Virus record (IMG/VR): IMGVR_UViG_3300024503_000015
Coordinates: 186,001 to 250,000 of that record
Strand: one strand, 5' to 3'
DNA: 64,000 nucleotides
The translations under genes were made by a program, and so were the position numbers. Positions 1,807 through 60,952 of the stretch are shown piece after piece (within the stretch, counting starts at the first letter, position 1; each line of letters opens with the position of its first letter). The notes under the pieces are model-generated. The model was given only the letters and a program-made list of their open reading frames with translations. It was not told the DNA's origin and did no database searches.

Positions 1807-2562
1807 ATGACGACAAAAAGAGCCAAAAAACGTTTTGCCAACGAGGGCTATAATAATCCTCGAGCAAATGTTATTGAGTTTCAACCATTTCAACACACAC
1901 TTCCTCAAAGTCTTCCACAGAAGAAAAAGAGCGTACACGTAATTCCGCGCAACCGTAATCAGGAAGAATATCTATTTAAACTATTAGACCCATCAAAAAA
2001 CATAGTTTTTGCTCTGGGCCCCGCTGGCACGGGCAAGACGCTGATAGCGTGTCAAGTCGGTATTAAACTCTTTAAAGAAGGGTTGGTAGATAAAATCGTG
2101 GTAACACGCCCTGCTGTTTCTGTAGACGAAGATCATGGATTCCTTCCTGGTACCCTAGAGCAAAAAATGGCTCCCTGGACTAGACCCATCTTTGATGTGC
2201 TAGCCGAGTACTATTACGCTCGCGATATCGAGAATATGATCCGAGAAGGTGTTATTGAAATTAGCCCGTTAGCATATATGAGAGGTCGAACCTTCAAGAA
2301 GGCATACATTATTGCAGATGAAATGCAAAATGCTACGCCAAATCAAATGAAGATGTTGCTAACGAGATTGGGAGAAGGCTCTAAGATGGTCGTAACCGGT
2401 GATTTAAGACAAGCCGATAGATTAGAAGATAACGGTTTAATTGATTTCACGGAGCGATTGGCAAATAAACAACTAGATTTGTTAAGCGTCGTGCAATTTG
2501 GTATGAAAGATATCGAAAGACACGAAGCAGTAAAGGAGGTGTTGTCTATTTACGGTGATTAA
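1807..2562 (+). CDS. phoH: PhoH-like ATPase
   Basis: Motifs GPAGTGKT, RPAV, GFLPG, PLAYMRGRTF, ADEMQN and VTGDLRQ; AAGGAGAG SD before ATG 1807. Confidence 0.95.
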   Translation: MTTKRAKKRFANEGYNNPRANVIEFQPFQHTLPQSLPQKKKSVHVIPRNRNQEEYLFKLLDPSKNIVFALGPAGTGKTLIACQVGIKLFKEGLVDKIVVTRPAVSVDEDHGFLPGTLEQKMAPWTRPIFDVLAEYYYARDIENMIREGVIEISPLAYMRGRTFKKAYIIADEMQNATPNQMKMLLTRLGEGSKMVVTGDLRQADRLEDNGLIDFTERLANKQLDLLSVVQFGMKDIERHEAVKEVLSIYGD

Positions 2563-2574
2563 ACCTAGGAGGGG

Positions 2575-3024
2575 TTAATCCCCCTCCACTTGTTTTACTT
2601 CGATGCCCGATGCTTTGAGAAACTTGACCCCCGAGTCATCTCTATAGTTTTCACCATAGTAAACACGATTAATGCCAGACTGATAGATAAGTTTGGCGCA
2701 ATCGAGGCAAGGAGCATGAGTAATAAAAATATTAGCACCAAGCCCAGACTCATTACTACGGGCCAATTTAGCAATGGCGTTTGTTTCGGCATGTAGTACC
2801 TCCGGTTTAGTTTTTAAAACTGTTTCAGGTTCATCGTCGCCGTTATCTTCCCAAATCTCATATTCGCAGTTATTATCCCAACCTGCTGGCATACCATTGT
2901 AGCCAATACTAATAATTCTATCGTCTTTAACTACAATGGCACCTACGTGTAATCGACGAGCATGACTGAGTTCTGCGAATGTTTCCGCAGTTTTCATGTA
3001 TGCTTTTACTAACTTAGGCTTCAT
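2575..3024 (-). CDS. dCMP deaminase / ComEB family
   Basis: VGAIVVKD, GYNG, HAETNAI and PCLDC zinc-binding deaminase motifs. Confidence 0.92.
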   Translation of the reverse strand: MKPKLVKAYMKTAETFAELSHARRLHVGAIVVKDDRIISIGYNGMPAGWDNNCEYEIWEDNGDDEPETVLKTKPEVLHAETNAIAKLARSNESGLGANIFITHAPCLDCAKLIYQSGINRVYYGENYRDDSGVKFLKASGIEVKQVEGD

Positions 3025-3940
3025 TGAGTCTTGCTAATCTAATCAGCGTGGCCGCTAGATTAATTTCAGGATCTGCCATAGATACGTGATCCACTAATCC
3101 TTGTTTAATTACCAGCACAGCATTGTCTTGTGTATGCTCGTCCTTGCCAAACAGAGTAATGTTGTTGTACATCCAAGTGTAGATTTCTTCCATTTCTTCT
3201 GGACGGGCTTGACTACATAACAGTTTACGTGCTTCTTGAATACGGCCTTTCTTAAACAGTTCAACCATTTCAACTCTGTAATCTGCACTACCTTCTACAG
3301 CATCTGGCAGTATTAATTTACCAGCCAAACTGTTCATTTGAACGTTGTTAATACACTTACGCAAATCTGGATATGTACCTTTGACATAAGTGTCCAGTGT
3401 ATCCAAGTCAAATTCGATATTTTCTTCTACAAGAATAGTTGCTACACGAGCAGTAAACTCTGTAATGTCTGTGCGTTCAATTTTAATTTCTTGGCAACGA
3501 CTTTTAACTGGAGTAATAATTCTGTGTGGATAGTTACAAGTAAAAATAAAGCGAACGCTGTTACTGTAATCTTCCATTAAGTTACGTAGTGCTGGTTGAA
3601 CAGAATCTTTGTTCATATAATCTGCTTCGTCGATCAGCACAACTTTATAGTCGCCAAACGGCATAGTTTGACAAAAACCGATTAGTTTATCAATCCATTC
3701 AATTTTACGACCTTCCTTACTGCCGTTAGCAATAAGAATGTCTGTGTCTTCGACACCGATTTCATTTAACAATACTTTAGCCAGTGTAGTTTTGCCTGTA
3801 CCAGCATTGCCGCTAAACAGCAAGTGCGGAATAGCCTTCTGACTAATCCATTTTTCAATTTGCTGTTTTAGTGTTTCATCCTTAAACACATAACCATCTA
3901 CAGTTTTAGGACGATACTTTTCTACCCATAATTCTTTCAT
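3014..3940 (-). CDS. Clamp loader AAA+ subunit (RFC / T4 gp44-like)
   Basis: LWVEKYRP, GNAGTGKTT, IDEAD and SRC motifs. Confidence 0.93.
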   Translation of the reverse strand: MKELWVEKYRPKTVDGYVFKDETLKQQIEKWISQKAIPHLLFSGNAGTGKTTLAKVLLNEIGVEDTDILIANGSKEGRKIEWIDKLIGFCQTMPFGDYKVVLIDEADYMNKDSVQPALRNLMEDYSNSVRFIFTCNYPHRIITPVKSRCQEIKIERTDITEFTARVATILVEENIEFDLDTLDTYVKGTYPDLRKCINNVQMNSLAGKLILPDAVEGSADYRVEMVELFKKGRIQEARKLLCSQARPEEMEEIYTWMYNNITLFGKDEHTQDNAVLVIKQGLVDHVSMADPEINLAATLIRLARLNEA

Positions 3941-11782: not shown

Positions 11783-14700
11783 TTAGAATCTACCAACAAC
11801 AATCTCAACTAGGCCTTCGCCTAAATCGTCTTTGTTCTCTAAACTCTTACCAATAATAGTTCCTACAGATGGAGTATTATTAACTATTGCGTAACCTTTC
11901 TTAGCCGCAGTAACTAGAATATCACCTTTCTTAACCTTACCAAGTACTTTACATGGCAAGCGTCCTGTTAGGCCTACTGCTAGTGGATGTTTTCCTGCTA
12001 AATCAGAGTTCATCAAATGCGCTGGTTTTTCAGAAATAACACCAGCAACTCTAGTATCGTTATGTTTGTCAGTGACTGTAATTTCTTCATCACCACCAAA
12101 TACTACAACAGTACCAGTTTCATATTCTGCATCTGACAAGTATTTTTCAGCCAAGTCAGCGTAACGAGCACTTGTAGCAGTACCATTGAATAATGTTGCG
12201 TATAGTGTGTCGGTAAATGGATTACAATAAATGCCGCCTGTGCCATATACACTATTACCGCTACCCCATAACATTTGATATGTGCTGTTACTATCGTTGT
12301 TATAGTTAATTGTAACTGTACTTGCATTACCTGCAATGTTCATTGACTGTCCGCTAATGAACGAAGCAACTTTTGCGGCTGTAGCAGAGCGATAGTAGTT
12401 ATCGCCAAACTTAGCCATTATGTATGTAATGGTGCCACCACTTACATCGTCGCTACTGTTAAAGTAACTGCTGTTAATATAACGTCCGTTGAAGTCACCG
12501 TTAACGTCACGTGCAACTAATGTGCTTCCTGTGGCCGCACTTGTTGCGTTAGTTTGGATTGTACGTGTTGTACTACCATCGTAACTTGAACCAGCAGTGA
12601 AACTTAGGTATGTGCTTAGACCCAGTGTACCAGCCAATGTACCAGTAACAGCACCGTAGATAGTTCCACCAACACGTAGGTCGCCACTGATACCTGCACC
12701 GCCTGTAACCTGTAATGTACCAGTACCGTTGGCAGCACCTGTTACTGCTTGGTTAGCAGTTAAGGTTACTGTATCGTTAGCAGACAACAATTTAAAATAA
12801 CCATTACCTCGAGTAGTTGCACCAATGTTTACGTTGTTTATTGATCCGACACTGGCCGGAGCAATAGTTACAGTACCGGTACCACTTGGACTTAGTGTTA
12901 CGTTAGCATTAGCAGGACTAAATGTTGTAGTGCTTGCTGATGTTATTGCGTTTGCACTTAAAGTACCAACTGTGGTAATAGTTGTGCCTGCTGAAGTAGT
13001 TCCAACTGCTGTTAAGAAGTCTACAGCACCGGGTGTAGTCATAGTCAGTGTAGTTCCGCTGACGCTTAAGGTCTTATAACTACTTGAAGTTAAGTCTAAC
13101 TGTGCTACAGCAACACGGCCGCTACCATCAGATTGTATCAATGAACTAGCCTGAGCACTTGTACTAATGTTTGTTGTACTGTAAGCGTTTGGACCAATAG
13201 CAGTTAAAATCATTGCACGACCATTGCTACCTACTGATCCTGGAGCAAATGACGCATTCTTAATACCATCGCCGTTGGTAACAATCTGTCCAGATGTTAC
13301 TTGACGAGGATATGTAGCACTGCCTGTATTATTACCTAAATAAGTGTCGTTGGCAATATACTGTAATTTAGTTTGTAATACACCTGTAGTTGTTGAACTG
13401 GATGTTTGCAACTCAATCCAACCGTTAGTTGCAGTAAATTCTGTACTCTTGAAACTTGCTAGACCCAAATCTGCCTGTGCAATACTTGTAGCATTTGCAC
13501 GAGTAGTTGCTTTATTCATGTCTAACTTACTTTGTGCAATAGCCGCACTAGAATTAACGTCTGCGTTAATAATTACATTAGACTTGATGTTTAAAGCAAG
13601 ATTTTTAGTTCCAGGAGTCAATGAAGTTTGAATATCGCCTGTGCTAACTGTTTCAGCGTTGATCCATTTAACTCCGTTATAAACTAATAAATCATTTAAA
13701 CTTCTTGCTGGACTTGTTGAAGTATCAACTCTGTCATCGCTTAGTTCTTGATTTCTAACATATAACTTGTTAGCCGCATCTGTATCAGCAGTAGGACTAC
13801 CTAAGTTAGCAATAACAAATCCGCCCATGTCCATTGGATCTGGACCAGTAAATGTTAACAAACCAGCACGATCCATGTAGCCTGGACCAATTAGTGCAGT
13901 TGGATCTAGAACGTTATTTGTACGATCCATTCCAAGACGTCTGTCAATGTAACCTTGTGTTGCCGCTTCAGTTGGTAGCGCATCGTTAGCACCGTCAGTA
14001 AATCTATCATCGTTTGAGAATTCACTAACTGTAACACCACGCTTAAATCCTAGACCGTCTAAGTTTGACAACGCAATAGATGCCGCAAACGTTACACGAC
14101 CAGTACCTTGGTCAACTGTAAAGAATCGACCTACACGGAAAATACCGTCTTGGTCTGTGGTTACATAGAAACAACGTCCTCTTGTACGTTCTGTAACTTC
14201 ACGTGCTTGGTTAGGTTCTTTTGGAGCACCGTAAATCTTGCTTGGGAAGTTAGTATCGTTATAGCCTCCAGTACCAATGTCTAAGAAGTCATGTCCTGTA
14301 ACACGGCAAGTACTAATACGTACAATAACTTCTGCTGGCTCTGTGCTAGATAAACCTGCACGTAATGTTGGAGGTTCAGAAATATCCAAGTTAAAGTCTG
14401 GATCAACTGGTGTATTAATACCGCTAGCAGATGTTCCTGCTAGACACTTATCAGCGACATCTTCTATTTCAACATAAGCGTAACCGGCTAATAACCCCAT
14501 GTCAGTGTAACTTAAAATTTTATGAATCTTGCCATCCCAGGCAGTAATCATATCTCCGGTATTAAGTCTGCTTTCAATGTCAGTTTCGTTTACACGGTCG
14601 ATGGCAATCTTAGTATCACCAGCAGTCGACCCCATAGTCTGTCCAACATTATCTGGATCAGCGTTAGATACATTTTCTGCATTGACTAGTAATTTTACAT

Positions 14701-17700
14701 AATCGTAAGTTGTATCGAAGCCTAGAATACTTTCGTCTACCGCAAGGTCTTCATTTAATGGACCTTTGTTACCGTATGCTAACACACGATAAACAATAGC
14801 ACCTGCATCGGGATCACCGACGAATGTCAATGCAGTACTTGGACGAACCGGGTTAGTGTCATCGACTTCGTAGAACTTAAAGTTTTGGTTACTGCGAATA
14901 ATAATTGGTTGGTCATGTGACAATGCTACGGCCAAGCCGTTTGTAGCAGTATCATTATTACCGCCAGTGTTGATGTTTAGACGTAGAACGTTGCCTAGGC
15001 CCCATAGGCTAGCCAAACCGCCTGCCCATGTTCCAGGATTGGTACTGTACTCTAGTGTAACACTAGATGTTGTACTAGCGGTAGCAGTATATACACCGTT
15101 AAACCCAGAAGTTGTTGATCCACTAACTGTGTAAGGTACACCAATTCTTGGTGTATATGGTTCAGCAGTGAACGAATATGTTACGTAATATTTTCCGCCT
15201 GTTGGCCCAGTCTTAAGTGGTGTTCCAGAAACAGACTGTGCCAAGGTACTTGAAACATCAGTTACACCTGCAACTTCGTAACGAGCAATACCGTTACCAA
15301 TAATAGTTTTAACAGTGATAAAGAAGCCCGAACCTGTTCCGCCTACGTTTGTATTACTGCAACTTAAAATATCACCTTCGCTGTATCTAATACCTGCGGC
15401 AACTAAACCTACAGTAGTTACTACACCTCCTGACACAACAATGTTAGCAGTGATACCACTACCAGTTCCGCCTGTTAACGGAACATTAATATATGTGCCG
15501 TTGGTATAACCACTACCACCGATTAAACTAGTTGCGTCTAGTTCTGTAACAACGCCAGCGCCGTGGTTAATTTCAACTTCAGATACGTTGTATGGTGAGT
15601 AATCATGTTGGTAGAAAAATACCTGTAAATCACCAACATCGTTGTCTGTGCTATAAATTCCTTGTTTGTAAACACGAGCAACCTGCATCATGTTGTCTGA
15701 CAAGTTACACTTATCTGGAACTTCTAATGGATCACTACCTTCAGAAATAATACCATACTCGCCGTGTGCGTTAGAACCGTTCAATGAACGAATCTGTCCA
15801 CCGTTGTTGGCATAATAAGCAGTCCAGCAATAGTAACTGAACACAGAAACTGTTTCAATCAAACCAATGTTTGTAGCAACCAGTCCATAACCTAAGTCGT
15901 TAATCTGTGTAAAGTCATTTGAACACATACTGGTGTTACCAGCACTTAGTAGCATAAAGTCTTTTACATACTCTATGGTAGTAGTGCCAGTGCCAAATGC
16001 ACCCGGGTCACTTGGATAACGTAGTGTCATCGAAGTTAGTGTAGATGCTACACACTCTACAGCATCATTGTTATAGTTAGAGTTGCTGTTGCCAAACACT
16101 CTATAACGTGTTTTAGTTCTAGGAGCAGTAGTTCCAACGGGCGTAACAATGCTGAATACTACATCGTAAGATCCATCCCCGACGCCCGAGTCTGCCTTGC
16201 TAGTGAAGGTAGAAATAGTATATTCTAAGTCGTTAGTTACAGGAGTAGTTGTAGAAAGAACTAATCTGTATGTTGGGTAAACGATAGGTTTGGCACCAGT
16301 TAATACTGTTGAAACATCTACTTCCGGGTCTGTAATAACTTCGTTTAATAAATCAAACAACTGTCCTGCTCGTGTAACAAATGCAGAGCCGTCGTAGTCA
16401 GAACTGAATACCTGTGATACTCTATTCTCTACAGCAACATCGTTAATAACTTGATAATTTAATGTTGGTGGAACTTGATTCAATACAGCCTGTGCAACTT
16501 CCTTGGCATAGGCAAATGAATCTAATGTTTGTGATAATTGATTTTCTAATACAACACGGCTACTAGCAGTACCTACATAGTAACGCTGTGCGGCACGAAT
16601 TGTTAAGTATGTTCCGCCATATAACAAGTCTGCTGAAACTGCGGCAACAATAAAGCCAACGTCTCGTGAACAAATTTCTTCATTGTAAACTAATGTGTTT
16701 GTATAATTAGCATCGATATAATTTGTTACAGCAGTTTGTAAAGTTGACTTAGCACTTTGTAGTGCAGAATTTGCACCAGTTAAGCCAGCACTTACCCAAG
16801 CAGTACTTGGAGTAATTGTTGAAGGAACAGAACCGAGCCCAAGGTCGATAATTGTTAAAATTTCTCCAATACGCTGTCCAGCAGTAGCACTGGCAGAACT
16901 GTTACCTGGAGTACCGCGAACCTGCGCAACACCACCTTGTAATGCAGTAATAGGTAAGTCTAATGCAATGTCTTCAACTAGACTTTGTAGATAACCATAT
17001 GCGGCCAATGTTGCTGGTTTCTCAGGAGCCGCAACTTGTAGAGTTGTGTAAGAATAATAAGCCTTACCAGCAATCAATGTTTGAATGTTACCACCGTAGG
17101 TTAGGTCGTGATATAGTGCATCTAAAATGTATTCTGTATCACGTAAGCATACAGCAGGGTCATAACTTAATCCAACATAGTTGTTAGAAATATATTGAAT
17201 TACTTCTGCTTTAATAAATTCTCTGTTAGATTCAATCAGTGTTCTAGCACGATTATAATTTACATCGTAGCCTGTTGGATCAGGAGTTACGATTGCAGGT
17301 TCTTGAGTTAGTCCGTTAGTAATAACATCTAAGAACATATTCATGTTGGTAGTTACACTAGTAACTGCGGTAGCACTTGCACTAACAACAGATAATATTT
17401 CATCTCTTAAGAAAGTAAATGCGTCAATAGTTGCGGCTTTTTGTACGCCAACAGCCACAGCGGCTGAAGCTCTGTAATAAGATCTTGCCGCTGTAATTGT
17501 CTGGAAGTTGCCGCCAAACATTAAGTCGTAACCAATAGCATCAATTACATAACCCACGTCACGTTGACATGTAGCAGAATCATAGGTAAATCCTACATAT
17601 TTGTTGTTAATGTAGTTAATAACTTCTGCTTTGATAAAATCTTTATTATCGACTAACAATGCACGAGCACCACGAGCACTTGGCGGATTTTCTAAAATGC

Positions 17701-20700
17701 CAATGAACTCGTCAAACAAATCTTGAATAGTTGCTTCTGCTAAGCCGCCATCGGTAATATCGGTATCGATATACTGTAGAACAGATTGTTGATATCGTAC
17801 TGTTGGATCTTCGTTATTAATAACATTTAATATCAATGTTTCAATGTAGTTAATAGCCGCAAGTGTGTTGGCCAACTGCTGGTCAATAACAATCTTAGAA
17901 CTAGCACTAGCATTGAAGTATGCTAGAGCTGCCTGAACTGTTTTTAAATTACCGCTATAATAAATGTCGTGTGCAATAGCATCGCAGATGTATCCAGTGT
18001 CACGAGCACAAGTATCTTGGTTGTAACTATATCTTTGTTGTAGATAAACTAATGTGTCAGACTTGATACTTTCTTTGTTGTTTAACAATAATGTTCTGCT
18101 GTCTGTTAACGAACCAGACACACTATAGAAAGTTGGATATTCAATAGTAGGAGCCGCTTCACGTCCGCTTAAAATAATAGTATTAATGTAGCCCATTAAC
18201 ACACCTACTCTAGCAGATTCAGTTGCGCTACCTGGATTAACTAAATCAAATACCTGTGTTACAGCACTTTGTTTAGGGAACGGAACAGGAGTATTAGTAA
18301 CAACTAACTGTGCAACACCACTGGCATAGGCCAATGCTTCTGTGGTTTGCAATGTTTGTCCAGGAATTTGCAAACTTCCGTTACCATCGTAATATTGATA
18401 TCCGGCTTCTACAGTTGCCGAGTTACCTTCATATAGTAAGTCGTAAACAATAGAATTTAAAATGTATGCCGCATCTCGACGACACTTGTCTTCGTCGTAG
18501 ACAAAGTCTGGATATTCTTCAGCAATCCAGGCAATAATTTCTTCTTTAATAAATTCAATGTTATCTAAAATAAGATTTTTTGCATTTACTCTTGAAGTAG
18601 GAGCACCTGACGGATCTGACCATGTAATTGTATCTGATGAAATAATACCGTTAGCAATGATATCTGTTATCTCATCAAAACTTGCTTCTGCTCTTAGACG
18701 TGCAACAGAGTTACCGGCTAATACATCAGAAATTAATGTTCTTGTATAGATTAACGCATCTAAGTATTCATCTTTTTGGTCTGGAAGAATACTGTATTGT
18801 GTGCCGCGATAGTATGATTGTCCAGCACGTACAGCATTAAAGTTTGTACCTAGTGCTAGATCGTAACCTAGTGCATCAACAATCAATCCAACGTCACGAG
18901 CACATTTGGTTTCGTTGAATGTAAATGGTGGACTTAGTTCTGTATTAATATAACCAATAACTTCTGCTTTGATAAAGTCGATGTTTCGACGAATTAATTT
19001 TCTAGCATTTCCATAGCCGTTGCCGTCATCAGTGTATGCTTCAACTTTAAAAGTTCTTCCGTCAATAACAAATGAGCAAGGAGTTGTTGGAGCACGTTCA
19101 CTGCCTGTTACTAGGAATTCTGTGTCGCTGATTTTTTCTTGAATCTTAAGAGGAACGTTACCAGCAAAGCCGTCAACATACTGTCCACCAGCAAAACGTT
19201 GTTTGTTTAGTGATCCTGCAAAAGAACCGGACTGTTGAATATATGCAGACTTGGTTAAAATTTGACCTTCTGGGTCAAGTACCATCATAAAGCCGCCGTG
19301 GCCTTGACAGGTAATCTGACGAATAATAACAGCATCGTTACATAAGAATACGTCAAGGTCTCTGTTGTTCTTTGGTTCACTTAAAATATCAGACGGGTCT
19401 GTTAGATAGTGATAACCGTATTCTGTGCTGGTTAAAGTTAATCCGTCAAATGTTTTATCTCTACGGAACCAAACGTCAACCCATGGACTGCGACTTGGGC
19501 GGTCCGCTGGACGAACAATACATCTACGCAATTCGTCACCAACGATAGCAACGTTTGGCGGGACACGAATTGGATAGTCTTCAAAATAGATACCAGATTC
19601 AACAACAATACTAATTTGGATATTTTTAACTGCTTGGTCAAACTCTAGGTTTTCGCCAGGCACAAAATCACCAATAACATCCTGCAAGTCAAAATAGTCT
19701 TCGCCGATACTTGAACTACCATCGGAGCCATAGTATTGATAAATGAAACCCTGTGCGCCGCTGGTACGTCCAACAACAATCTTACCGGAGACAATATCTG
19801 GTTTTGGTAATTGACCTTGGTCAACACGAGAACCACCGTTGTTAGTAAAGTAAACACGAGTAGTACCAGATGCACCAGATTCAATTCTTGTAACTTCAGA
19901 GAACGCTTCACCGCCACCGTAGGCAATTAACTGACGATAAGGACCAGTTTCCCATGGTGCATCATTTACTAATTGTTCTGCTTTTTGACAGGCTTTGTTA
20001 ATACTTGCATAAGCATAAGAACGATCGCGTCCTTCTTTTCCACGCGGTGTACGTGCCTGTGTGTCGTCACCGCCTGTGGTAACGTACAAGTTAAATCTGC
20101 TTGAATAACTTGAATTATCTACATAATATTTTGTAGCGGCTTGTAAGTCATCTTCTCCGTTAGGCGTACCAGCACCTGCAAGTCCGCCTGGATGATCTGC
20201 TAAGTTTAGCACACCAGTCATATCGCCGCCAGTTTTTAATACAACTTCTGCGGCACGTGGTGCTTGGTTACCTGTGGCGTTTGCTGGCACATTTAAGTGA
20301 CCAGTCATTGTGTCGCCTGTAATGTTTACATATTTGGAGTCGGCATAACCTTTGTTAATAGCAAAGGAATCTATGCTATAAAGAGTTTCGTGCTGTGTGT
20401 TGAAACTATTAACAGCAGTTTGGAAATCTGTTTGATTAATAGGACTGCGTAAGCCGCCGATTAATTGATTACGTGCATCCAGCGCATATTGTAATTTTGG
20501 TAATGGGTCGTCCTGTAATTTAGAACTTAATGTATCAATTTTAACGGAACCGTAACTGGTAATAGTACCAGTTGCCGCACTAGTTGATAAGTTTGTTCCT
20601 GCGTTTGTATATACTAGAACATTGTCTACTGTGCCAGTTAACAATAGGGCAGAAGTAGTGTTAAATGAAGTATTGTCTGTGGACGCGATTGTAACTCGTT

Positions 20701-21061
20701 GTCCAGGATCTAAATTGTGGTTTGCTGAAAGTGTAATAGTGGCAACGTTGCTACTTCTTGATACACTAACAATATCAAAGGTTTCTTGCTCGGAATAATC
20801 AAACTGGATAGTACCGTTAGGACTGAAAAAGTCTTTGAATACTAAACTAGTACCAATAGAATTAACTACTGGAATCTTATTACCTTGTCCTACTAATGTA
20901 TCAGGAGTATCGCTAAGGTCAGTGAACTTTAAAAATCCGCCTTGACCGAAAACAGCATATAACTCTTGGAAGTTTTCATTCGTTTTTCTAAACGCTTCAC
21001 GGATACTATCACCAGTTCCGTCATTACCTGATACGCCGATGTCGACTATTTTACGTGCCAT
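11783..21061 (-). CDS. Giant (~3100 aa) virion tail/baseplate protein
   Basis: gp9/10-like N-terminus (IGVSGNDGTGDSIREAFRKTNENF); six internal CxRD repeats; beta-rich regions; C-terminal YADLAEKY...GTVVVFGG domain common in tail fibres. Confidence 0.85.
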   Translation of the reverse strand: MARKIVDIGVSGNDGTGDSIREAFRKTNENFQELYAVFGQGGFLKFTDLSDTPDTLVGQGNKIPVVNSIGTSLVFKDFFSPNGTIQFDYSEQETFDIVSVSRSSNVATITLSANHNLDPGQRVTIASTDNTSFNTTSALLLTGTVDNVLVYTNAGTNLSTSAATGTITSYGSVKIDTLSSKLQDDPLPKLQYALDARNQLIGGLRSPINQTDFQTAVNSFNTQHETLYSIDSFAINKGYADSKYVNITGDTMTGHLNVPANATGNQAPRAAEVVLKTGGDMTGVLNLADHPGGLAGAGTPNGEDDLQAATKYYVDNSSYSSRFNLYVTTGGDDTQARTPRGKEGRDRSYAYASINKACQKAEQLVNDAPWETGPYRQLIAYGGGEAFSEVTRIESGASGTTRVYFTNNGGSRVDQGQLPKPDIVSGKIVVGRTSGAQGFIYQYYGSDGSSSIGEDYFDLQDVIGDFVPGENLEFDQAVKNIQISIVVESGIYFEDYPIRVPPNVAIVGDELRRCIVRPADRPSRSPWVDVWFRRDKTFDGLTLTSTEYGYHYLTDPSDILSEPKNNRDLDVFLCNDAVIIRQITCQGHGGFMMVLDPEGQILTKSAYIQQSGSFAGSLNKQRFAGGQYVDGFAGNVPLKIQEKISDTEFLVTGSERAPTTPCSFVIDGRTFKVEAYTDDGNGYGNARKLIRRNIDFIKAEVIGYINTELSPPFTFNETKCARDVGLIVDALGYDLALGTNFNAVRAGQSYYRGTQYSILPDQKDEYLDALIYTRTLISDVLAGNSVARLRAEASFDEITDIIANGIISSDTITWSDPSGAPTSRVNAKNLILDNIEFIKEEIIAWIAEEYPDFVYDEDKCRRDAAYILNSIVYDLLYEGNSATVEAGYQYYDGNGSLQIPGQTLQTTEALAYASGVAQLVVTNTPVPFPKQSAVTQVFDLVNPGSATESARVGVLMGYINTIILSGREAAPTIEYPTFYSVSGSLTDSRTLLLNNKESIKSDTLVYLQQRYSYNQDTCARDTGYICDAIAHDIYYSGNLKTVQAALAYFNASASSKIVIDQQLANTLAAINYIETLILNVINNEDPTVRYQQSVLQYIDTDITDGGLAEATIQDLFDEFIGILENPPSARGARALLVDNKDFIKAEVINYINNKYVGFTYDSATCQRDVGYVIDAIGYDLMFGGNFQTITAARSYYRASAAVAVGVQKAATIDAFTFLRDEILSVVSASATAVTSVTTNMNMFLDVITNGLTQEPAIVTPDPTGYDVNYNRARTLIESNREFIKAEVIQYISNNYVGLSYDPAVCLRDTEYILDALYHDLTYGGNIQTLIAGKAYYSYTTLQVAAPEKPATLAAYGYLQSLVEDIALDLPITALQGGVAQVRGTPGNSSASATAGQRIGEILTIIDLGLGSVPSTITPSTAWVSAGLTGANSALQSAKSTLQTAVTNYIDANYTNTLVYNEEICSRDVGFIVAAVSADLLYGGTYLTIRAAQRYYVGTASSRVVLENQLSQTLDSFAYAKEVAQAVLNQVPPTLNYQVINDVAVENRVSQVFSSDYDGSAFVTRAGQLFDLLNEVITDPEVDVSTVLTGAKPIVYPTYRLVLSTTTPVTNDLEYTISTFTSKADSGVGDGSYDVVFSIVTPVGTTAPRTKTRYRVFGNSNSNYNNDAVECVASTLTSMTLRYPSDPGAFGTGTTTIEYVKDFMLLSAGNTSMCSNDFTQINDLGYGLVATNIGLIETVSVFSYYCWTAYYANNGGQIRSLNGSNAHGEYGIISEGSDPLEVPDKCNLSDNMMQVARVYKQGIYSTDNDVGDLQVFFYQHDYSPYNVSEVEINHGAGVVTELDATSLIGGSGYTNGTYINVPLTGGTGSGITANIVVSGGVVTTVGLVAAGIRYSEGDILSCSNTNVGGTGSGFFITVKTIIGNGIARYEVAGVTDVSSTLAQSVSGTPLKTGPTGGKYYVTYSFTAEPYTPRIGVPYTVSGSTTSGFNGVYTATASTTSSVTLEYSTNPGTWAGGLASLWGLGNVLRLNINTGGNNDTATNGLAVALSHDQPIIIRSNQNFKFYEVDDTNPVRPSTALTFVGDPDAGAIVYRVLAYGNKGPLNEDLAVDESILGFDTTYDYVKLLVNAENVSNADPDNVGQTMGSTAGDTKIAIDRVNETDIESRLNTGDMITAWDGKIHKILSYTDMGLLAGYAYVEIEDVADKCLAGTSASGINTPVDPDFNLDISEPPTLRAGLSSTEPAEVIVRISTCRVTGHDFLDIGTGGYNDTNFPSKIYGAPKEPNQAREVTERTRGRCFYVTTDQDGIFRVGRFFTVDQGTGRVTFAASIALSNLDGLGFKRGVTVSEFSNDDRFTDGANDALPTEAATQGYIDRRLGMDRTNNVLDPTALIGPGYMDRAGLLTFTGPDPMDMGGFVIANLGSPTADTDAANKLYVRNQELSDDRVDTSTSPARSLNDLLVYNGVKWINAETVSTGDIQTSLTPGTKNLALNIKSNVIINADVNSSAAIAQSKLDMNKATTRANATSIAQADLGLASFKSTEFTATNGWIELQTSSSTTTGVLQTKLQYIANDTYLGNNTGSATYPRQVTSGQIVTNGDGIKNASFAPGSVGSNGRAMILTAIGPNAYSTTNISTSAQASSLIQSDGSGRVAVAQLDLTSSSYKTLSVSGTTLTMTTPGAVDFLTAVGTTSAGTTITTVGTLSANAITSASTTTFSPANANVTLSPSGTGTVTIAPASVGSINNVNIGATTRGNGYFKLLSANDTVTLTANQAVTGAANGTGTLQVTGGAGISGDLRVGGTIYGAVTGTLAGTLGLSTYLSFTAGSSYDGSTTRTIQTNATSAATGSTLVARDVNGDFNGRYINSSYFNSSDDVSGGTITYIMAKFGDNYYRSATAAKVASFISGQSMNIAGNASTVTINYNNDSNSTYQMLWGSGNSVYGTGGIYCNPFTDTLYATLFNGTATSARYADLAEKYLSDAEYETGTVVVFGGDEEITVTDKHNDTRVAGVISEKPAHLMNSDLAGKHPLAVGLTGRLPCKVLGKVKKGDILVTAAKKGYAIVNNTPSVGTIIGKSLENKDDLGEGLVEIVVGRF

Positions 21062-21131
21062 TGAATACTCCAAAAAAGACTTTGTATCCAATATTTAGCA
21101 GATAATTTTATAACCTTAATGTAAATAACTG

Positions 21132-56712: not shown

Positions 56713-57516
56713 TTAACTGACAATACTATTTAAGTATTCCTGAATTGTCGTTGCAATTTTTTCTTGCACAGACAATTTAATTTTTGCATTCTCACCATTA
56801 GCACTCATATACTGTTTTCCGTATTCAGTACAATCTATACCAGTGTGCATAAACTCTTTAAAAATTTCTGAGTTGTCAGGATTAGGATCTCCAAACCTAA
56901 CAGTCGTCCATTTAATATTTTGAGAATCTAAAAACTTAATTAACATATTGTAACCATTTCTATGTCTACGAATATGCCAATCTTTGCTTTGACTTTTTTG
57001 AAAAGCAATACCGTTTAATCGCTTTTTATGAACTTCAATTGGATATCTATCTGGATTCCATTCTCCGTCTACATAATTTTCACGTTCAAATACATATCGT
57101 TGATTGTTATATTTGAAACTGTGTGCTATATGACTAAACGTGTAATCTGTAACTAATACATGATCCGGTTTAGGATTCTCTGCTAGGTACTGTTTTAATC
57201 TTTTGTGATGACCTATAAAATGTCCACCGTTAATAGATATATTAACTACATTGGAAACATTTAAGAAATTAGGCCATGCGGCTTTTTGTTCTTCTTCCCA
57301 TAGATAATGCCAAACAACATTTTCCATATTGCCATTGGGCATAGGTGTTGTAACATTGTTTTCTTTTCTATGTTTTAGATACCATTTAAAAACACTTCTA
57401 AAATCATTATGGAAACGTAGACTCCAAGTCCTCGGAGCATCGTCGTTGACTATGTCACCAGCCAAACAATTATTGCCATTACTTTGGCAATCTCCTAAAA
57501 TTAAAAGTGTTTTCAT
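56713..57516 (-). CDS. Hypothetical protein with SGNH-like N-terminus inside the tRNA array
   Basis: LLILGDCQS N-terminal block; 267 aa; more AT-rich than the flanking tRNAs. Confidence 0.65.
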   Translation of the reverse strand: MKTLLILGDCQSNGNNCLAGDIVNDDAPRTWSLRFHNDFRSVFKWYLKHRKENNVTTPMPNGNMENVVWHYLWEEEQKAAWPNFLNVSNVVNISINGGHFIGHHKRLKQYLAENPKPDHVLVTDYTFSHIAHSFKYNNQRYVFERENYVDGEWNPDRYPIEVHKKRLNGIAFQKSQSKDWHIRRHRNGYNMLIKFLDSQNIKWTTVRFGDPNPDNSEIFKEFMHTGIDCTEYGKQYMSANGENAKIKLSVQEKIATTIQEYLNSIVS

Positions 57517-57530
57517 ATTAATAGTTATCT

Positions 57531-57607
57531 TGGCGCACCGTAGGGGACTTGAACCCCTGGCCTCCGACGTGACAGGCCGGCGCTCTGACCAACTGAGCTA
57601 ACGGTGC
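57531..57607 (-). tRNA. tRNA-Asp(GTC)
   Basis: Canonical; G73; CCA. Confidence 0.95.
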
Positions 57608-57612
57608 AAATT

Positions 57613-57692
57613 CTATTCTGAAACACACTAACCAACTACCAGAAGCATTTATAATGCCGTTATTCGGTTCGAGCTAATGTGTTTTAGAATAG
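57613..57692 (-). ncRNA. Candidate small stem-closed RNA
   Basis: ~19-bp terminal stem with one A-C mismatch. Confidence 0.35.
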
Positions 57693-58572
57693 TGCTAACG
57701 CTGAGATTATACGTTAGCCAATAGTGCCTCTAGCATTATAGTCAGCCTTGCGAGCCAACCTTCTCTAGACATCCACATAAGCCATTACTGTACCTATGTC
57801 CACTATCAGCATCGCCGTTTTTAAAGACAGGCAGTAGTCTTGTCGCCATATGCTATTCTACGCTATCTACTCCGTTGACCTTGCGAGCCATTCAGCGGCG
57901 CTAACCACTTACGAAACTTCCAGCATAAACAGATTTCACCTTGCGAGCTACGTCTGACTCGATTACCTTGCGGCTCGAGTATTAGATGCTTTTCACATAT
58001 GACCGAGGCAGTCTTTGCATTTTATAATCGATAGTTGGGATCGAACCAACAGTCCATTGCTTAAGAGGCAATTGCGTTACCATTACGCTATATCAAACCT
58101 ACCGCGATGAGCTGCCTCTGTTGCTCAATAACCTTTTGGATTACTGAATACAACTCACCACATACCTTTTGTCTCGCGGACTACTCAGTGATATTTCACG
58201 ATCAATGTCCTGCATCAAAACAGTCCACTAACCATTAATATTGCATACAAGCCCTTAGGAGCGACCCCTTGGACAAATACACTACCCTTTCTCATACCAA
58301 TTCGCAAGTTGGTTTTGTTAGGAAGTCAGCACCACCCGTTACTTTTCATGCACCCTGGTTCCCTTGCGGGCCAGTCGATACACATTCTTTCCCTAACACT
58401 TGCTTCATTGTTACATCCACCGGTCTTCTCAGTGAACGCTACCTCGCGGTAGTGAGCAGGCTTGTTTACATGAACCATTACTGGCGGAGTTGCGTAGGCT
58501 TACCTCCTTTGGGTTGATCACTCAACTTATTCTTCGTCAACGGCGAACCGCCAACAGGATAATAAACTACCC
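57692..58572 (-). ncRNA. GOLLD-like giant ornate RNA (~880 nt)
   Basis: No credible ORF; five C(GCAA)G, three GCGA and one UUCG tetraloops on the minus strand; embedded tRNA; located in a tRNA array. Confidence 0.65.
58027..58097 (-). tRNA. tRNA-Lys(CTT)-like module embedded in the giant RNA (no CCA)
   Basis: GCGT/ACGC D-stem; ATTGC-CT CTT AA-GCAAT; GTTGG-TTCGATC-CCAAC; 6-bp acceptor stem; enclosed by GAGGCAG/CTGCCTC. Confidence 0.75.
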
Positions 58573-58582
58573 TTAAATTTTT

Positions 58583-58751
58583 ACCATTAAAAAATAACAT
58601 TACACCCTATGGGATGAAACGTATTTCTGAGTGGAGTTCGATTCTCCTCATAAGCCATTGTTCACGGTTTTCTCAGAAGGGTAAGATGGCCTTATCCTTC
58701 ATAAGTCTATGCGTCCATAGACGATACCCGTCAATGCTATTTCTTAATGGT
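58583..58751 (-). ncRNA. Stem-closed RNA whose 5' strand starts in the ACCA of tRNA-Tyr
   Basis: 19-bp stem (58733-58751 with 58583-58601) including two G-U pairs on the minus strand. Confidence 0.45.
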
Positions 58752-58833
58752 GGATGCGGCTGGAGTCGAACCAGCAGTGCCGTAAGGCGGCGGATTTACA
58801 GTCCACTGGGGTTACCAATTTTCCTACACATCC
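58748..58833 (-). tRNA. tRNA-Tyr(GTA)
   Basis: Class II cloverleaf; CCA. Confidence 0.92.
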
Positions 58834-59754: not shown

Positions 59755-59828
59755 TGGCAGGCCTACCAGGACTCGAACCTGGAACGACTGAGTCAAAGTC
59801 AGTTGTGTTACCATTACACCATAGGCCA
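59755..59828 (-). tRNA. tRNA-Gln(TTG)
   Basis: Unpaired 1-72; G73; CT TTG AC; CCA. Confidence 0.9.
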
Positions 59829-59838
59829 ACAGATTGAA

Positions 59839-60051
59839 TTTGTAAGTAGTTGCCCCATCGTTATAGCAACCATTCACCCATGTATATAAAGCCGGCTGGG
59901 ACTCGGTACGTCACTTGGGATACTAGTCCAGTTAGCAACCAATCTGCAGGGATCTTCCGATCCCCCGGGAGTTGAACCCGTCCCCTTTTACTATTAAGGT
60001 AGTTCGAACTTACCTACAATAGCGTGACATTCTCTTGCTGACACTTACAAA
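59839..60051 (-). ncRNA. YrlA/Y-RNA-like RNA with a circularly permuted tRNA domain
   Basis: Order T-arm (CGGG-TTCAACT-CCCG), 7-bp acceptor-like hairpin capped by GGAA, D-like arm with TGG, all inside a long terminal stem (TTTGTAAGT/ACTTACAAA). Confidence 0.6.
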
Positions 60052-60054
60052 ACT

Positions 60055-60129
60055 TGGTGCCCCAGGATGGAATCGAACCACCACACCCTGCTTACAAAAC
60101 AGGACCTCTACCACTAAGGATACAAGGGC
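60055..60129 (-). tRNA. tRNA-Thr(TGT)
   Basis: Cloverleaf; CCA. Confidence 0.9.
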
Positions 60130-60134
60130 AAAAT

Positions 60135-60212
60135 TGGTCTCCACGGTACGATTCGAACGTACAGCCTCCTGACTCCAGATCAGGCCGTCTACCAGATTGA
60201 CATTACGCAGAG
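60135..60212 (-). tRNA. Non-canonical tRNA-Pro(TGG)
   Basis: C1-G72, A73; anticodon loop TC TGG AG (C33, A37); CCA. Confidence 0.65.
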
Positions 60213-60222
60213 ATAAAAATAA

Positions 60223-60298
60223 TTGCGACCGAAGGACTCGAACCTTCGCGGTAATCTAGAATGCCCCGGCAAGGCCGGTTAACCCACCATTGTCGCAA
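60223..60298 (-). ncRNA. tRNA-like remnant without CCA or a normal anticodon arm
   Basis: TTGCGAC/GTCGCAA stem; GAAGG-TTCGAGT-CCTTC T-arm; CCGGC-CTT-GCCGG hairpin. Confidence 0.5.
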
Positions 60299-60301
60299 AT
60301 T

Positions 60302-60376
60302 TGGTGGAGGCCGAGGAAATCGAATCCTTCTAGACATCTTCCTTGCAAGGGAAGACCGTAGCCCACTACTGCCCCC
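60302..60376 (-). tRNA. tRNA-Ala(TGC), minimal D-arm
   Basis: G3-U70; CT TGC AA; D-arm GTAG-TGGG-CTAC; CCA. Confidence 0.8.
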
Positions 60377-60876: not shown

Positions 60877-60952
60877 TGGTCCCTGCTGTGAGATTCGAAC
60901 TCACACCTCATTGATTAAGAGTCAAGTGCGCTACCATTGACGCTAAACAGGG
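60877..60952 (-). tRNA. tRNA-Lys(CTT)
   Basis: Cloverleaf; CCA. Confidence 0.9.

What the first reader, a model, noticed from the sequence alone, without database searches (positions are those of the whole stretch)
57692..58572. ~880-nt GOLLD-like giant RNA carrying an embedded tRNA-Lys(CUU)
Seen: a long non-coding stretch dense in GNRA/UUCG-capped hairpins on the minus strand. A CCA-less tRNA-Lys cloverleaf is inserted at the tip of a GAGGCAG/CTGCCTC helix, while a separate canonical tRNA-Lys(CTT) exists at 60877. Established: GOLLD RNAs occur in phage tRNA clusters, can host tRNAs in their variable region, form large RNA-only assemblies, and have unknown function. Inference: a GOLLD variant or a new ornate class; the embedded tRNA may be a display module or a processing signal. 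Family assignment is by architecture only.
Basis: partly seen in the sequence, partly recalled or inferred. Interest (0 to 1): 0.7.

Follow-up and report, generated by a model that had tools for sequence, protein, structure and literature searches.

The report
Phage GOLLD RNA with embedded tRNA
This is a real, very highly expressed member of the known GOLLD family of giant phage RNAs that build RNA-only cages, and its built-in tRNA-Lys-like module looks like a swappable tRNA mimic, not a source of working tRNA.

Summary
The observation and the family guess both hold. Rfam's GOLLD model (RF02032) matches window 57698..58161 (-) at 207 bits against a cut-off of 150. The tRNA-Lys(CUU) cloverleaf (58025..58098) lies in the model's variable linker.

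54 non-redundant relatives from viral contigs support a structured RNA of about 876 nt (58573..57698): 234 predicted pairs, 149 with compensatory changes. In four river metatranscriptomes this stretch has contig depth of 1,000-40,000, against 0-10 on the flanks. Contigs bridge both tRNA junctions at the same depth as their neighbours.

GOLLD and linker tRNAs are already published, so this is a new member of a known kind.

Possibly new points:
- Embedded tRNAs in this freshwater subfamily never encode CCA (0/90, against 97% of 1,319 free tRNAs).
- Their acceptor tops are degenerate.
- They are mostly Asn(GUU), Lys(UUU) or Lys(CUU).
- They move between scaffolds like cassettes.
- A conserved hairpin follows the 3' end.

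I favour a tethered tRNA mimic, perhaps a decoy for anticodon nucleases. That step is inference.

The parts
57698..58573 (-). Whole GOLLD RNA, about 876 nt (5' end about 58573, 3' end about 57698-57714).
   Evidence: Conservation and covariation in 54 relatives. RNA contig depth of 1,200-41,000 inside, against 0 outside, in runs X20 and X22. In 11 relatives a TTGACA-N17-TAyAAT promoter ends 8 nt before the conserved start.
58162..58573 (-). 5' domain, not covered by the Rfam model. It contains many covarying hairpins.
   Evidence: RNAalifold on alignment A2 predicts helices across columns 52-534 with many compensatory pairs, for example 114-118/123-127, 202-206/211-215 and 254-262/359-374.
58100..58161 (-). 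Long hairpin at the start of the Rfam model (positions 1-62). Its 3'-side bulge carries the 5' strand of the linker-closing helix. It is followed by the invariant GUAGGUU joining segment.
   Evidence: Rfam alignment. Covarying pairs 541:587, 550:571 and 555:566.
58112..58118 (-). 5' strand (GAGGCAG) of the pseudoknot helix that closes the linker.
   Evidence: 100% paired with 58005..58011 in 54 relatives, with compensatory changes; 0 of 2000 shuffles reach this.
58025..58098 (-). Embedded tRNA-like module with anticodon CUU (Lys). It has no CCA and a U1.U72 mismatch.
   Evidence: ARAGORN. Rfam tRNA 62.5 bits. D, anticodon and T arms covary across relatives. Acceptor-stem and CCA statistics.
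58005..58011 (-). 3' strand (CTGCCTC) of the linker-closing helix.
57698..58004 (-). Conserved 3' domain of GOLLD. It includes the Rfam pseudoknot 58004..57995 with 57853..57844.
   Evidence: Rfam alignment. In the pseudoknot, 9 of 10 pairs are at least 98% paired (8 of them 100%), with several pair types; 0 of 1000 shuffles reach this.
57610..57695 (-). Conserved long hairpin directly 3' of GOLLD. Its arms are CACUAUUCUAAAACAC and GUGUUUCAGAAUAG, around a variable loop. It is probably a 3'-end processing element, because it is not part of the abundant RNA.
   Evidence: Fold of -30 kcal/mol, z -4.9. Arms pair at 15 or more of 18 positions in 40 of 54 relatives, with covarying arm sequences. 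RNA depth is about 0 here.
58574..58616 (-). Upstream control region. It holds a terminator-like hairpin with a U run (58616..58603), then an A/T-rich -10-like stretch just before the start.
   Evidence: terminator-like site; sequence. No clear -35 element in the window itself. A 10-fold weaker read-through contig, 58484-58728, occurs in X20.
60877..60952 (-). Free, canonical tRNA-Lys(CUU) of the same phage, listed for comparison. It makes the embedded copy redundant for decoding.
   Evidence: 7/7 acceptor pairs, discriminator A and encoded CCA.

Best explanation
SHOWN. Window 58573..57698 (-) encodes a genuine GOLLD RNA (Rfam RF02032) of about 876 nt. It lies in the tRNA array of an uncultivated freshwater jumbo phage. 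It accumulates to very high levels, with the tRNA-Lys(CUU)-like module still joined to both flanks.

FROM PUBLISHED STRUCTURES. GOLLD RNAs self-assemble into closed 10- to 14-mer RNA-only cages. Their variable linker points into the cage interior.

INFERRED.
- This RNA forms such a cage, with one tRNA-shaped module per chain tethered inside. The module is held at the tip of the covarying GAGGCAG/CTGCCTC helix.
- The module is a tRNA mimic that stays in the RNA. It is not a precursor of a working tRNA (my estimate about 0.7).
- Its selected part is the elbow plus an Asn/Lys-type anticodon arm. It is exchanged between scaffolds like a cassette.
- My committed but weakly supported mechanism (about 0.2-0.25) is a decoy. 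The abundant cage would present many copies of this arm to a factor that recognises such tRNAs. The most plausible factor is a host anticodon nuclease of the PARIS-AriB or PrrC kind. This would spare the phage's free tRNAs.
- The 5' end is probably a transcription start.
- The 3' end is probably made by cleavage at the conserved downstream hairpin.
For: Identity:
- Full-length CM hit at 207.2 bits against a cut-off of 150.
- 234 predicted pairs, 149 with compensatory changes, in 54 relatives.
- The Rfam pseudoknot and the linker-closing helix both covary.
- The setting is a phage tRNA array.

Expression:
- Depth is 1,800-37,000 over 57670..58654, against 0-150 on neighbouring tRNAs and ORFs, in four metatranscriptomes.
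- The adjacent ORF is present at depth 6 on a 738-nt error-free contig, so the phage itself is in those runs.
- Probable DNA runs are nearly flat, 8-14 on the flanks and 13-78 inside.

tRNA retained:
- Contigs 57994-58125 (depth 2,787), 57994-58124 (2,083) and 57968-58124 (1,142) bridge both junctions.
- Neighbouring pieces of the same run have similar depth, 2,458-3,601.
- A Mycobacterium GOLLD pseudo-tRNA gave no separate northern signal (PMC6582537).

Not built as a tRNA:
- 0 of 90 embedded tRNAs encode CCA, against 1,275 of 1,319 free tRNAs in the same loci.
- Mean acceptor pairing is 5.46 of 7, against 6.78.
- Pair 1:72 forms in 46%, against 92%.
- RNAalifold finds D, anticodon and T arms but no acceptor stem.
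- No CCA-adding enzyme was found in the phage record.
- The phage has free Lys(CUU), Lys(UUU) and Asn(GUU) tRNAs.

Cassette behaviour and anticodon class:
- Embedded identities are Asn(GUU) 46, Lys(UUU) 17, Lys(CUU) 14 and Arg(UCU) 5 of 90.
- Embedded tRNAs resemble each other (median best identity 0.90) more than any free tRNA (0.71).
- The anticodon changes at least 20 times on a 54-tip scaffold tree.
- Identical tRNA cores carry different anticodons, and 94%-identical scaffolds carry cores that differ at 18 of 63 positions.
- A co-occurring strain has an Asn module between near-identical flanks, in DNA and RNA runs.

Cage and interior linker: PMC12286853 and PMC12990946.

Decoy lead:
- AriB targets are tRNA-Lys(UUU), Thr(UGU) and Asn(GUU).
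Against: - The window's own module is a good cloverleaf: 62.5 bits and 6 of 7 acceptor pairs. Cleavage by RNase P or RNase Z followed by host CCA addition cannot be excluded for it.
- Logan contigs show presence, not stoichiometry, and they give no strand or exact ends. Free tRNAs are poorly captured in such libraries.
- About 90% of a broad GOLLD sample has no linker tRNA. Two members of this same subfamily have a 40-nt linker without one. The core GOLLD function therefore does not need the module.
- A second sample, not selected through the linker flank, holds Gln(UUG), Gly(UCC) and UUA anticodons besides Asn, Lys, Thr and Arg. The anticodon restriction is a strong bias, not a rule. Part of it is shared ancestry and my first search pattern.
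- A module inside a closed cage may be hard for a nuclease to reach.
- The host and its defences are unknown.
- Cage formation by this sequence was not tested.
Confidence: 0.7

Rival explanations
1. Stored pro-tRNA ('inhibited storage'). The embedded tRNA-Lys(CUU) is a real tRNA precursor kept inside the cage. It is released by RNase P and 3' processing when needed, then CCA-tailed and charged.
For: The window's module scores 62.5 bits as tRNA and keeps its D, anticodon and T arms and its tertiary-contact nucleotides. The idea is published for Mycolicibacterium GOLLD (PMC12990946) and drawn in PMC12286853. Anticodons stay sense anticodons in nearly all copies.
Against: - 0 of 90 embedded tRNAs encode CCA, against 97% of free tRNAs in the same phages. 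The top three acceptor pairs are near chance.
- The phage already has a canonical tRNA-Lys(CUU).
- No phage CCA-adding enzyme was found, although the record is only about 71% complete.
- Junction-spanning RNA contigs are as deep as their neighbours.
- No free tRNA was seen in M. aubagnense.
- Identical bodies carry anticodons of different amino acids.
Confidence: 0.15
2. Passenger or structural filler. The tRNA-shaped module has no ligand. It is either a compact, well-folding spacer that helps the linker fold, or a selfish tRNA cassette that recombines into a permissive site.
For: Most GOLLDs lack it, and two subfamily members have a 40-nt linker instead. The module recombines freely among scaffolds. 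The linker is the one region of GOLLD that tolerates anything.
Against: All three arms are kept by compensatory changes. The anticodon loop stays YU-NUU-AA in 50 of 54 non-redundant copies, while the stems turn over. Copies too degenerate for ARAGORN to call still keep a CUUUUAA loop. About 87% of this large subfamily retains the module.
Confidence: 0.12
3. Not GOLLD, but a new ornate RNA class or a chance cluster of hairpins. Alternatively, a coding region read as RNA.
For: The Rfam model covers only 57698..58161. The 5' 410 nt have no database model. A sequence HMM of this subfamily does not find most other GOLLDs. Mechanical ORFs of 82 and 50 aa overlap the region.
Against: The full-length CM hit is well above the curated cut-off. 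The same model hits relatives in Sinorhizobium phage Phosso, Caulobacter phage Magneto and contig L041 at 169-189 bits. Substitutions are compensatory in helices, not codon-patterned. A variable 5' domain is itself a stated property of GOLLD.
Confidence: 0.01

Closest known systems
GOLLD RNA (Rfam RF02032); solved examples env-38 14-mer (PDB 9MEE) and Streptococcus agalactiae 12-mer (9L0R), as listed in PMC12990946
   Same: Full-length match to the family model and a conserved 3' domain with its pseudoknot. A larger, more variable 5' domain. Total length over 800 nt. A phage origin inside a tRNA array. The variable linker sits at the same place: about nt 475-548 here, against nt 497-538 in env-38.
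   Different: The linker holds a complete cloverleaf instead of about 40 disordered nucleotides. The 5' domain could not be matched to P1-P13 by sequence. Assembly was not tested. A conserved 3'-flanking hairpin is described here.
Mycobacterial GOLLD with a (pseudo-)tRNA in J13/15 (PMC6582537; Morgado 2020, cited in PMC12990946)
   Same: A tRNA-like gene inside the GOLLD linker, within a horizontally acquired tRNA array. No separate tRNA was detected by northern blot.
   Different: That tRNA is reported as tRNA-Phe or a pseudo-tRNA in actinobacterial genomes. Here it is Lys(CUU), within a freshwater phage subfamily dominated by Asn and Lys modules.
GOLLD loci of Caulobacter phage CcrMagneto (phiCbK group) and Sinorhizobium phage Phosso
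   Same: RF02032 hits of 169 and 187 bits with a homologous embedded tRNA. Magneto's is annotated tRNA-Lys (AAG). Phosso's anticodon loop reads UCU by eye. Both have the same linker-closing helix with compensatory changes.
   Different: Only about 42-47% identity to the window over the full length. They are cultured phages with known hosts, so they are usable as experimental stand-ins. GOLLD is not annotated in either record.
ROOL RNA
   Same: A phage-borne, tRNA-island-associated giant RNA that forms a closed RNA-only cage with an interior disordered linker.
   Different: Unrelated sequence and fold. There is no Rfam ROOL hit in the window.
Phage T5 tRNA variants that neutralise PARIS (PMC11464382, PMC12409363)
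   Same: Phage-encoded Lys, Thr and Asn tRNAs involved in a conflict with a host tRNA nuclease. This is the same anticodon class as most embedded modules.
   Different: T5 tRNAs are free, functional and cleavage-resistant replacements. A role of GOLLD modules in defence evasion is my inference only.
tRNA-like structures used as mimics (plant-virus 3' TLS; the tRNA-like domain of tmRNA, including permuted two-piece tmRNA)
   Same: A cloverleaf or L-shape embedded in a larger RNA and used for binding, not decoding. The permuted module in L041 recalls permuted tmRNA genes.
   Different: Those mimics keep a chargeable CCA end. The GOLLD modules, except the one in L041, have none.

Membership tests
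GOLLD RNA (RF02032) | Covariance-model score at or above the curated gathering score. | tested here: met
   207.2 bits against 150, E 4e-57, model positions 1-416, no truncation.
GOLLD RNA (RF02032) | Conserved 3' domain helices and pseudoknot, kept by covariation. | tested here: met
   In the Rfam pseudoknot 58004-57995/57853-57844, 9 of 10 pairs are at least 98% paired (8 of them 100%), with up to 5 pair types. 3'-domain helices have many compensatory pairs.
GOLLD RNA (RF02032) | Large, less conserved 5' domain, giving a total length of about 700-850 nt or more. | tested here: met
   A 410-nt structured 5' domain with covariation, 876 nt in total. Correspondence to published helices P1-P13 was not established.
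GOLLD RNA (RF02032) | Variable linker between the 5' hairpin and the 3' domain, sometimes holding a tRNA. | tested here: met
   The tRNA lies at model positions about 63-140. Literature.
GOLLD RNA (RF02032) | Encoded by phages or prophages, usually beside tRNA genes. | tested here: met
   IMG/VR viral contig of 270 kb. 31 tRNAs on the same strand. Phage structural proteins and a T4-like cyanophage affinity.
GOLLD RNA (RF02032) | Self-assembly into a closed homo-oligomeric cage. | not testable with these tools
   The RNA exceeds the complex predictor's 300-nt limit per RNA chain. It needs native gel, mass photometry or cryo-EM.
GOLLD RNA (RF02032) | Abundant transcript during phage growth. | tested here: met
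   It is 100- to 1,000-fold deeper than flanking phage sequence in four river metatranscriptomes. Timing within infection is not testable.
Functional elongator tRNA-Lys | Cloverleaf with D, anticodon and T arms and conserved tertiary-contact nucleotides. | tested here: met
   ARAGORN score 116 and Rfam 62.5 bits. The arms covary.
Functional elongator tRNA-Lys | Fully paired 7-bp acceptor stem. | tested here: not met
   U1.U72 mismatch in the window. Across the family, mean pairing is 5.46 of 7 and 1:72 is paired in 46%, against 92% in free tRNAs.
Functional elongator tRNA-Lys | 3' CCA, which is encoded in this phage's other tRNAs. | tested here: not met
   No CCA. 0 of 90 embedded tRNAs against 97% of free tRNAs. 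Post-transcriptional addition is not testable.
Functional elongator tRNA-Lys | Released as a species of about 76 nt and aminoacylated. | not testable with these tools
   Only contigs of RNA runs were available. They show intact junctions but cannot exclude a processed fraction.
ROOL RNA and other Rfam giant RNAs | Covariance-model hit. | tested here: not met
   In the whole window, only GOLLD and tRNA models pass their gathering scores.

The most novel reading that the evidence does not exclude
The linker tRNA of this freshwater GOLLD subfamily is a rapidly exchanged decoy cassette. The cage would display 10-14 uncleavable-by-design or sacrificial Asn/Lys/Thr/Arg(UCU)-type anticodon arms at very high copy number. 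These would soak up host tRNA-targeting defence nucleases (PARIS AriB, PrrC or RloC-like enzymes). If so, at least this branch of GOLLD is an RNA-only anti-defence device. That would give the family its first assigned function.
Probability: 0.2. Interest if true: 0.85.

Novelty: new member of a known kind. Interest (0 to 1): 0.5.

Why it matters
GOLLD is among the largest structured bacterial and phage RNAs. Its cage structure was solved recently, yet its function is still unknown.

This locus adds no new class, but it offers several handles on that question:
- Environmental evidence that a phage GOLLD with an embedded tRNA is one of the most abundant phage transcripts in river water, and that it stays in one piece.
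- A large, diverse subfamily of at least 60 lineages in which the embedded tRNA has lost the features needed for charging. It keeps an Asn/Lys-type anticodon arm and is shuffled between scaffolds.
- Cultured stand-ins, the Caulobacter phiCbK-group phages and Sinorhizobium phage Phosso, in which mimic or decoy ideas can be tested genetically.
- Defined ends: a promoter-proximal start and a conserved 3' hairpin. These help in designing constructs.

Tried and rejected
- Near-identity search of 12 kb of the window against cultured phages found nothing. A distant search of the locus found only tRNA pieces, apart from Phosso and the Caulobacter phages.
- A sequence HMM of this subfamily's domains failed to detect most other GOLLDs: 65 of 87 gave no hit. 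I therefore could not show by sequence that the 5' domain is homologous to the canonical P1-P13.
- RNAalifold proposed two structures that I do not adopt. One is a local hairpin at 58013-58001. The other is a long-range pairing of the invariant GUAGGUU with AGCCUG in the 5' domain. Neither has any covariation. The first competes with the covarying pseudoknot. The literature assigns this joining segment to an intermolecular kissing loop.
- The apparent tRNA-skipping joint 58023->58096 looked at first like excision. It also occurs in probable DNA runs at phage depth, and the loose ends read into the Asn(GUU) module of L049/L077. It is therefore a strain variant, not processing.
- No CCA-adding enzyme (PF01743) or RNA ligase (PF09414) was found in the 270-kb record. 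The record is about 71% complete, so their absence is weak evidence.
- Two papers were not held in the library: Weinberg 2009 (looked up under the id I recalled for it) and Morgado 2020. I could not check whether the anticodon bias was already noted there. Among searchable papers, only four contain both 'GOLLD' and 'anticodon', and none reports the bias.
- I did not run the count of structure pairs on the 1,050-column alignment, to avoid sending a very long typed structure string. I made the same counts in scripts.
Full report
WHAT IS THERE

The window is bases 186001-250000 of a 270,181-bp linear IMG/VR viral contig, estimated about 71% complete. GC content is about 40%. It carries phage structural genes. 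One 884-aa protein has its nearest cultured relatives in T4-like Synechococcus myoviruses, at about 40% identity.

ARAGORN finds 31 tRNA genes on the minus strand between 53723 and 61379. The finding lies between tRNA-Tyr (58748..58833) and tRNA-Asp (57531..57607).

FAMILY ASSIGNMENT

A scan of the whole window against Rfam 15 gives one non-tRNA hit. It is GOLLD (RF02032) at 57698..58161 (-), 207.2 bits against a gathering score of 150, E 4e-57, covering model positions 1-416. The tRNA-Lys(CUU) at 58025..58098 falls inside the model's unstructured linker.

The same model hits three relatives:
- Sinorhizobium phage Phosso, 186.6 bits
- Caulobacter phage CcrMagneto, 169.4 bits
- viral contig L041, 188.5 bits

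Phosso and Magneto each have a tRNA at the same place. GOLLD is not annotated in either record.

EXTENT AND STRUCTURE

A 22-nt pattern taken just 3' of the linker retrieved 100 viral contigs. 80 loci contain the full length, and these collapse to 60 clusters at 93% identity. I aligned 54 of them, at 63-83% identity to the window (alignment A2).

- RNAalifold predicts 234 pairs, 149 of them with at least one double compensatory change. The pairs are spread over both the 5' 410 nt that Rfam does not model and the 3' domain.
- The Rfam-annotated pseudoknot (58004-57995 with 57853-57844) has 9 of 10 pairs at least 98% paired (8 of them 100%), with several pair types. 0 of 1000 shuffles reach this.
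Two more occur in Phosso and Magneto. 0 of 2000 shuffles reach this, and slid controls pair at 21-35%.
- The 5' strand of that helix lies in the bulge of the hairpin that opens the Rfam model. It is therefore a pseudoknot that closes the linker. It is probably P14 in the published numbering, but that is my inference.
- Conservation starts at 58573, and the last helix ends at 57698.

ENDS

5' end. 13 of the 54 relatives have a TTGACA-N16-18-TAyAAT promoter. In 11 of these the -10 element ends exactly 8 nt before the first conserved base. The 5' end is therefore most likely a transcription start. The window itself has only an A/T-rich -10-like stretch, preceded by a terminator-like hairpin at 58616-58603.

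3' end. Directly after the 3' end there is a long hairpin at 57695-57610.
- It folds at -30 kcal/mol, z -4.9.
- Its arms are conserved and covary around a variable loop. They pair at 15 or more of 18 positions in 40 of 54 relatives.
- It is not part of the abundant RNA (see below), so I read it as a processing element. This is inference.

EXPRESSION

Riverine runs hold the sequence. Logan contigs from four metatranscriptomes gave the following summed contig depths:

| Region | Depth |
|---|---|
| 57670..58654 (GOLLD) | 1,800-37,000 |
| Adjacent ORF | 0-10 |
| Neighbouring tRNAs | mostly under 150 |

A 738-nt error-free contig of the neighbouring ORF, at depth 6, shows that the phage itself is in these runs.

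At finer scale and 97% identity:
- RNA depth is 0 at 57400-57654 in both RNA runs, and from 58573 upward in run X22.
- RNA depth is 1,200-41,000 between those edges.
- Two probable DNA runs are nearly flat, at 8-14 on the flanks and 13-78 inside.

The abundant species thus matches the conserved 876 nt.

Contigs bridge both tRNA junctions: 57994-58125 at depth 2,787, 57994-58124 at 2,083 and 57968-58124 at 1,142. Neighbouring pieces of the same run have depths of 2,458-3,601. So the tRNA is largely still inside the RNA.

Limits of this evidence: contigs give no strand, no exact ends and no stoichiometry.

THE EMBEDDED tRNA ACROSS THE FAMILY

Embedded tRNAs compared with free tRNAs in the same loci:

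| Feature | Embedded (n = 90) | Free (n = 1,319) |
|---|---|---|
| Encoded CCA | 0 | 1,275 (97%) |
| Mean acceptor pairs, of 7 | 5.46 | 6.78 |
| Pair 1:72 formed | 46% | 92% |

In the window, the embedded copy is the only tRNA without CCA apart from a parsing ambiguity for tRNA-His. It has a U1.U72 mismatch. A canonical tRNA-Lys(CUU) with CCA sits at 60877..60952.

Across relatives the D, anticodon and T arms covary strongly, but no acceptor stem is recovered. The first 2-3 'acceptor' bases belong to the invariant GUAGGUU segment.

Identities in the first sample are Asn(GUU) 46, Lys(UUU) 17, Lys(CUU) 14, Arg(UCU) 5, a few Ile, Thr and Gln, and some oddities. Flanking free tRNAs are of all kinds. 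Several copies that ARAGORN does not call still show a CUUUUAA loop.

A second sample was drawn with a 3'-end motif and so was not selected through the linker.
- Only about 10 of 116 GOLLDs have a linker tRNA. All of those checked belong to this sequence subfamily.
- Identities there are Asn x2, Lys(CUU) x2, Thr(UGU), Arg(UCU), Gln(UUG), Gly(UCC) and UUA x2.
- Two members have a 40-nt linker without a tRNA.

The Asn/Lys preference is therefore a strong bias, not a rule.

The module also behaves as a cassette:
- Embedded tRNAs resemble each other (median best identity 0.90) more than any free tRNA (0.71). Their best free match is usually of another isotype.
- On a scaffold tree with the tRNA columns left out, the anticodon changes at least 20 times among 54 tips. 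Shuffled labels need 21-24 changes.
- Identical 63-column tRNA cores carry GUU against UGU, or GUU against UUU, in scaffolds only 75% identical. Scaffolds that are 94% identical carry cores differing at 18 positions. The correlation between scaffold identity and tRNA-core identity is r = 0.20.
- In the river samples, a strain with near-identical flanks carries the Asn(GUU) module of L049/L077 instead of Lys(CUU). This shows in both DNA and RNA runs.

HOW IT MOST LIKELY WORKS

From the literature:
- GOLLD forms closed 10-, 12- or 14-mer RNA-only cages.
- The unresolved linker lies in the cage interior.
- Linker tRNAs are known.
- A mycobacterial pseudo-tRNA in GOLLD gave no separate transcript.

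Combining this with the data above, I conclude that this RNA is a cage-forming scaffold carrying one tethered tRNA-shaped module per chain. I also conclude that the module is a retained mimic and not a tRNA precursor, with probability about 0.7.

What the mimic binds is unknown. The class of anticodon arms it keeps overlaps the known targets of the PARIS nuclease AriB, which are Lys(UUU), Thr(UGU) and Asn(GUU) (PMC12409363). [quoted passage not shown]

An abundant multivalent decoy is therefore my preferred specific mechanism, at about 0.2-0.25. It rests on resemblance only. Storage of a pro-tRNA (0.15) and a passenger or structural role (0.12) remain open.

NOVELTY

GOLLD, its phage and tRNA-array context, its cages and its occasional linker tRNAs are all published. 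This locus is a new member of a known kind.

- the acceptor and CCA decay of the embedded tRNAs
- the Asn/Lys bias
- the cassette-like exchange
- the conserved 3' hairpin
- the very high abundance in the environment

Noticed in passing
window 59837..60033 (minus-strand tRNA array, between tRNA-Gln 59755..59828 and tRNA-Thr 60055..60129): A second RNA-depth peak of 578-2,105 in four metatranscriptomes, against under 150 nearby. The stretch holds a T-arm-like GACGGGUUCAACUCCCG but has no Rfam hit, and its fold is not exceptional (z -1.1). It may be another abundant small RNA or a tRNA-like fragment.
   Followed up: partly
L041:7590-7712 (IMGVR_UViG_3300009154_000117), linker of a true GOLLD (188.5 bits): The linker appears to hold a circularly permuted tRNA. 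The order is T arm, 3' acceptor strand, discriminator and CCA, then a 9-nt loop, then the 5' acceptor strand (a perfect 7-8 bp helix), D arm and a GAU anticodon arm. The GOLLD chain would therefore enter and leave on the variable-loop side. This recalls permuted two-piece tmRNA genes.
   Followed up: partly
L003:1198-1517 (Caulobacter phage CcrMagneto, about 500 nt upstream of its unannotated GOLLD): Rfam finds a permuted tmRNA (70.3 bits) on the opposite strand, next to the GOLLD locus. Neither RNA is annotated in the record.
   Followed up: no
window 60139..60211 (-) and 60257..60341 (-): An extra tRNA-like match (Rfam 31.6 bits) that ARAGORN does not call, and a weak partial beta-tmRNA-like match (14.3 bits, E 0.03), both inside the tRNA array.
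   Followed up: no
window about 58640..58700, between tRNA-Tyr and the GOLLD start: Read on the plus strand, this stretch looks like the 3' half of a tRNA: a GGAGTTCGATTCTCC T arm followed by an acceptor-like strand and GCCA. It could be an inverted tRNA remnant. The same sequence precedes GOLLD in relatives L062, L074 and L103.
   Followed up: no
window 57610..57695 (-), and the same position in 40 or more of 54 relatives: A conserved, covarying long hairpin sits between the GOLLD 3' end and the next gene. It is absent from the abundant RNA. It is a candidate processing site, possibly of RNase III type.
   Followed up: yes
window 11783..21091 (-): An open reading frame of 3,102 aa, very large for a phage protein. 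It was not examined.
   Followed up: no
L172 and L180 (viral contigs), GOLLD linker: The embedded tRNA has anticodon UUA, which would read the UAA stop codon. ARAGORN labels it 'Stop'.
   Followed up: no
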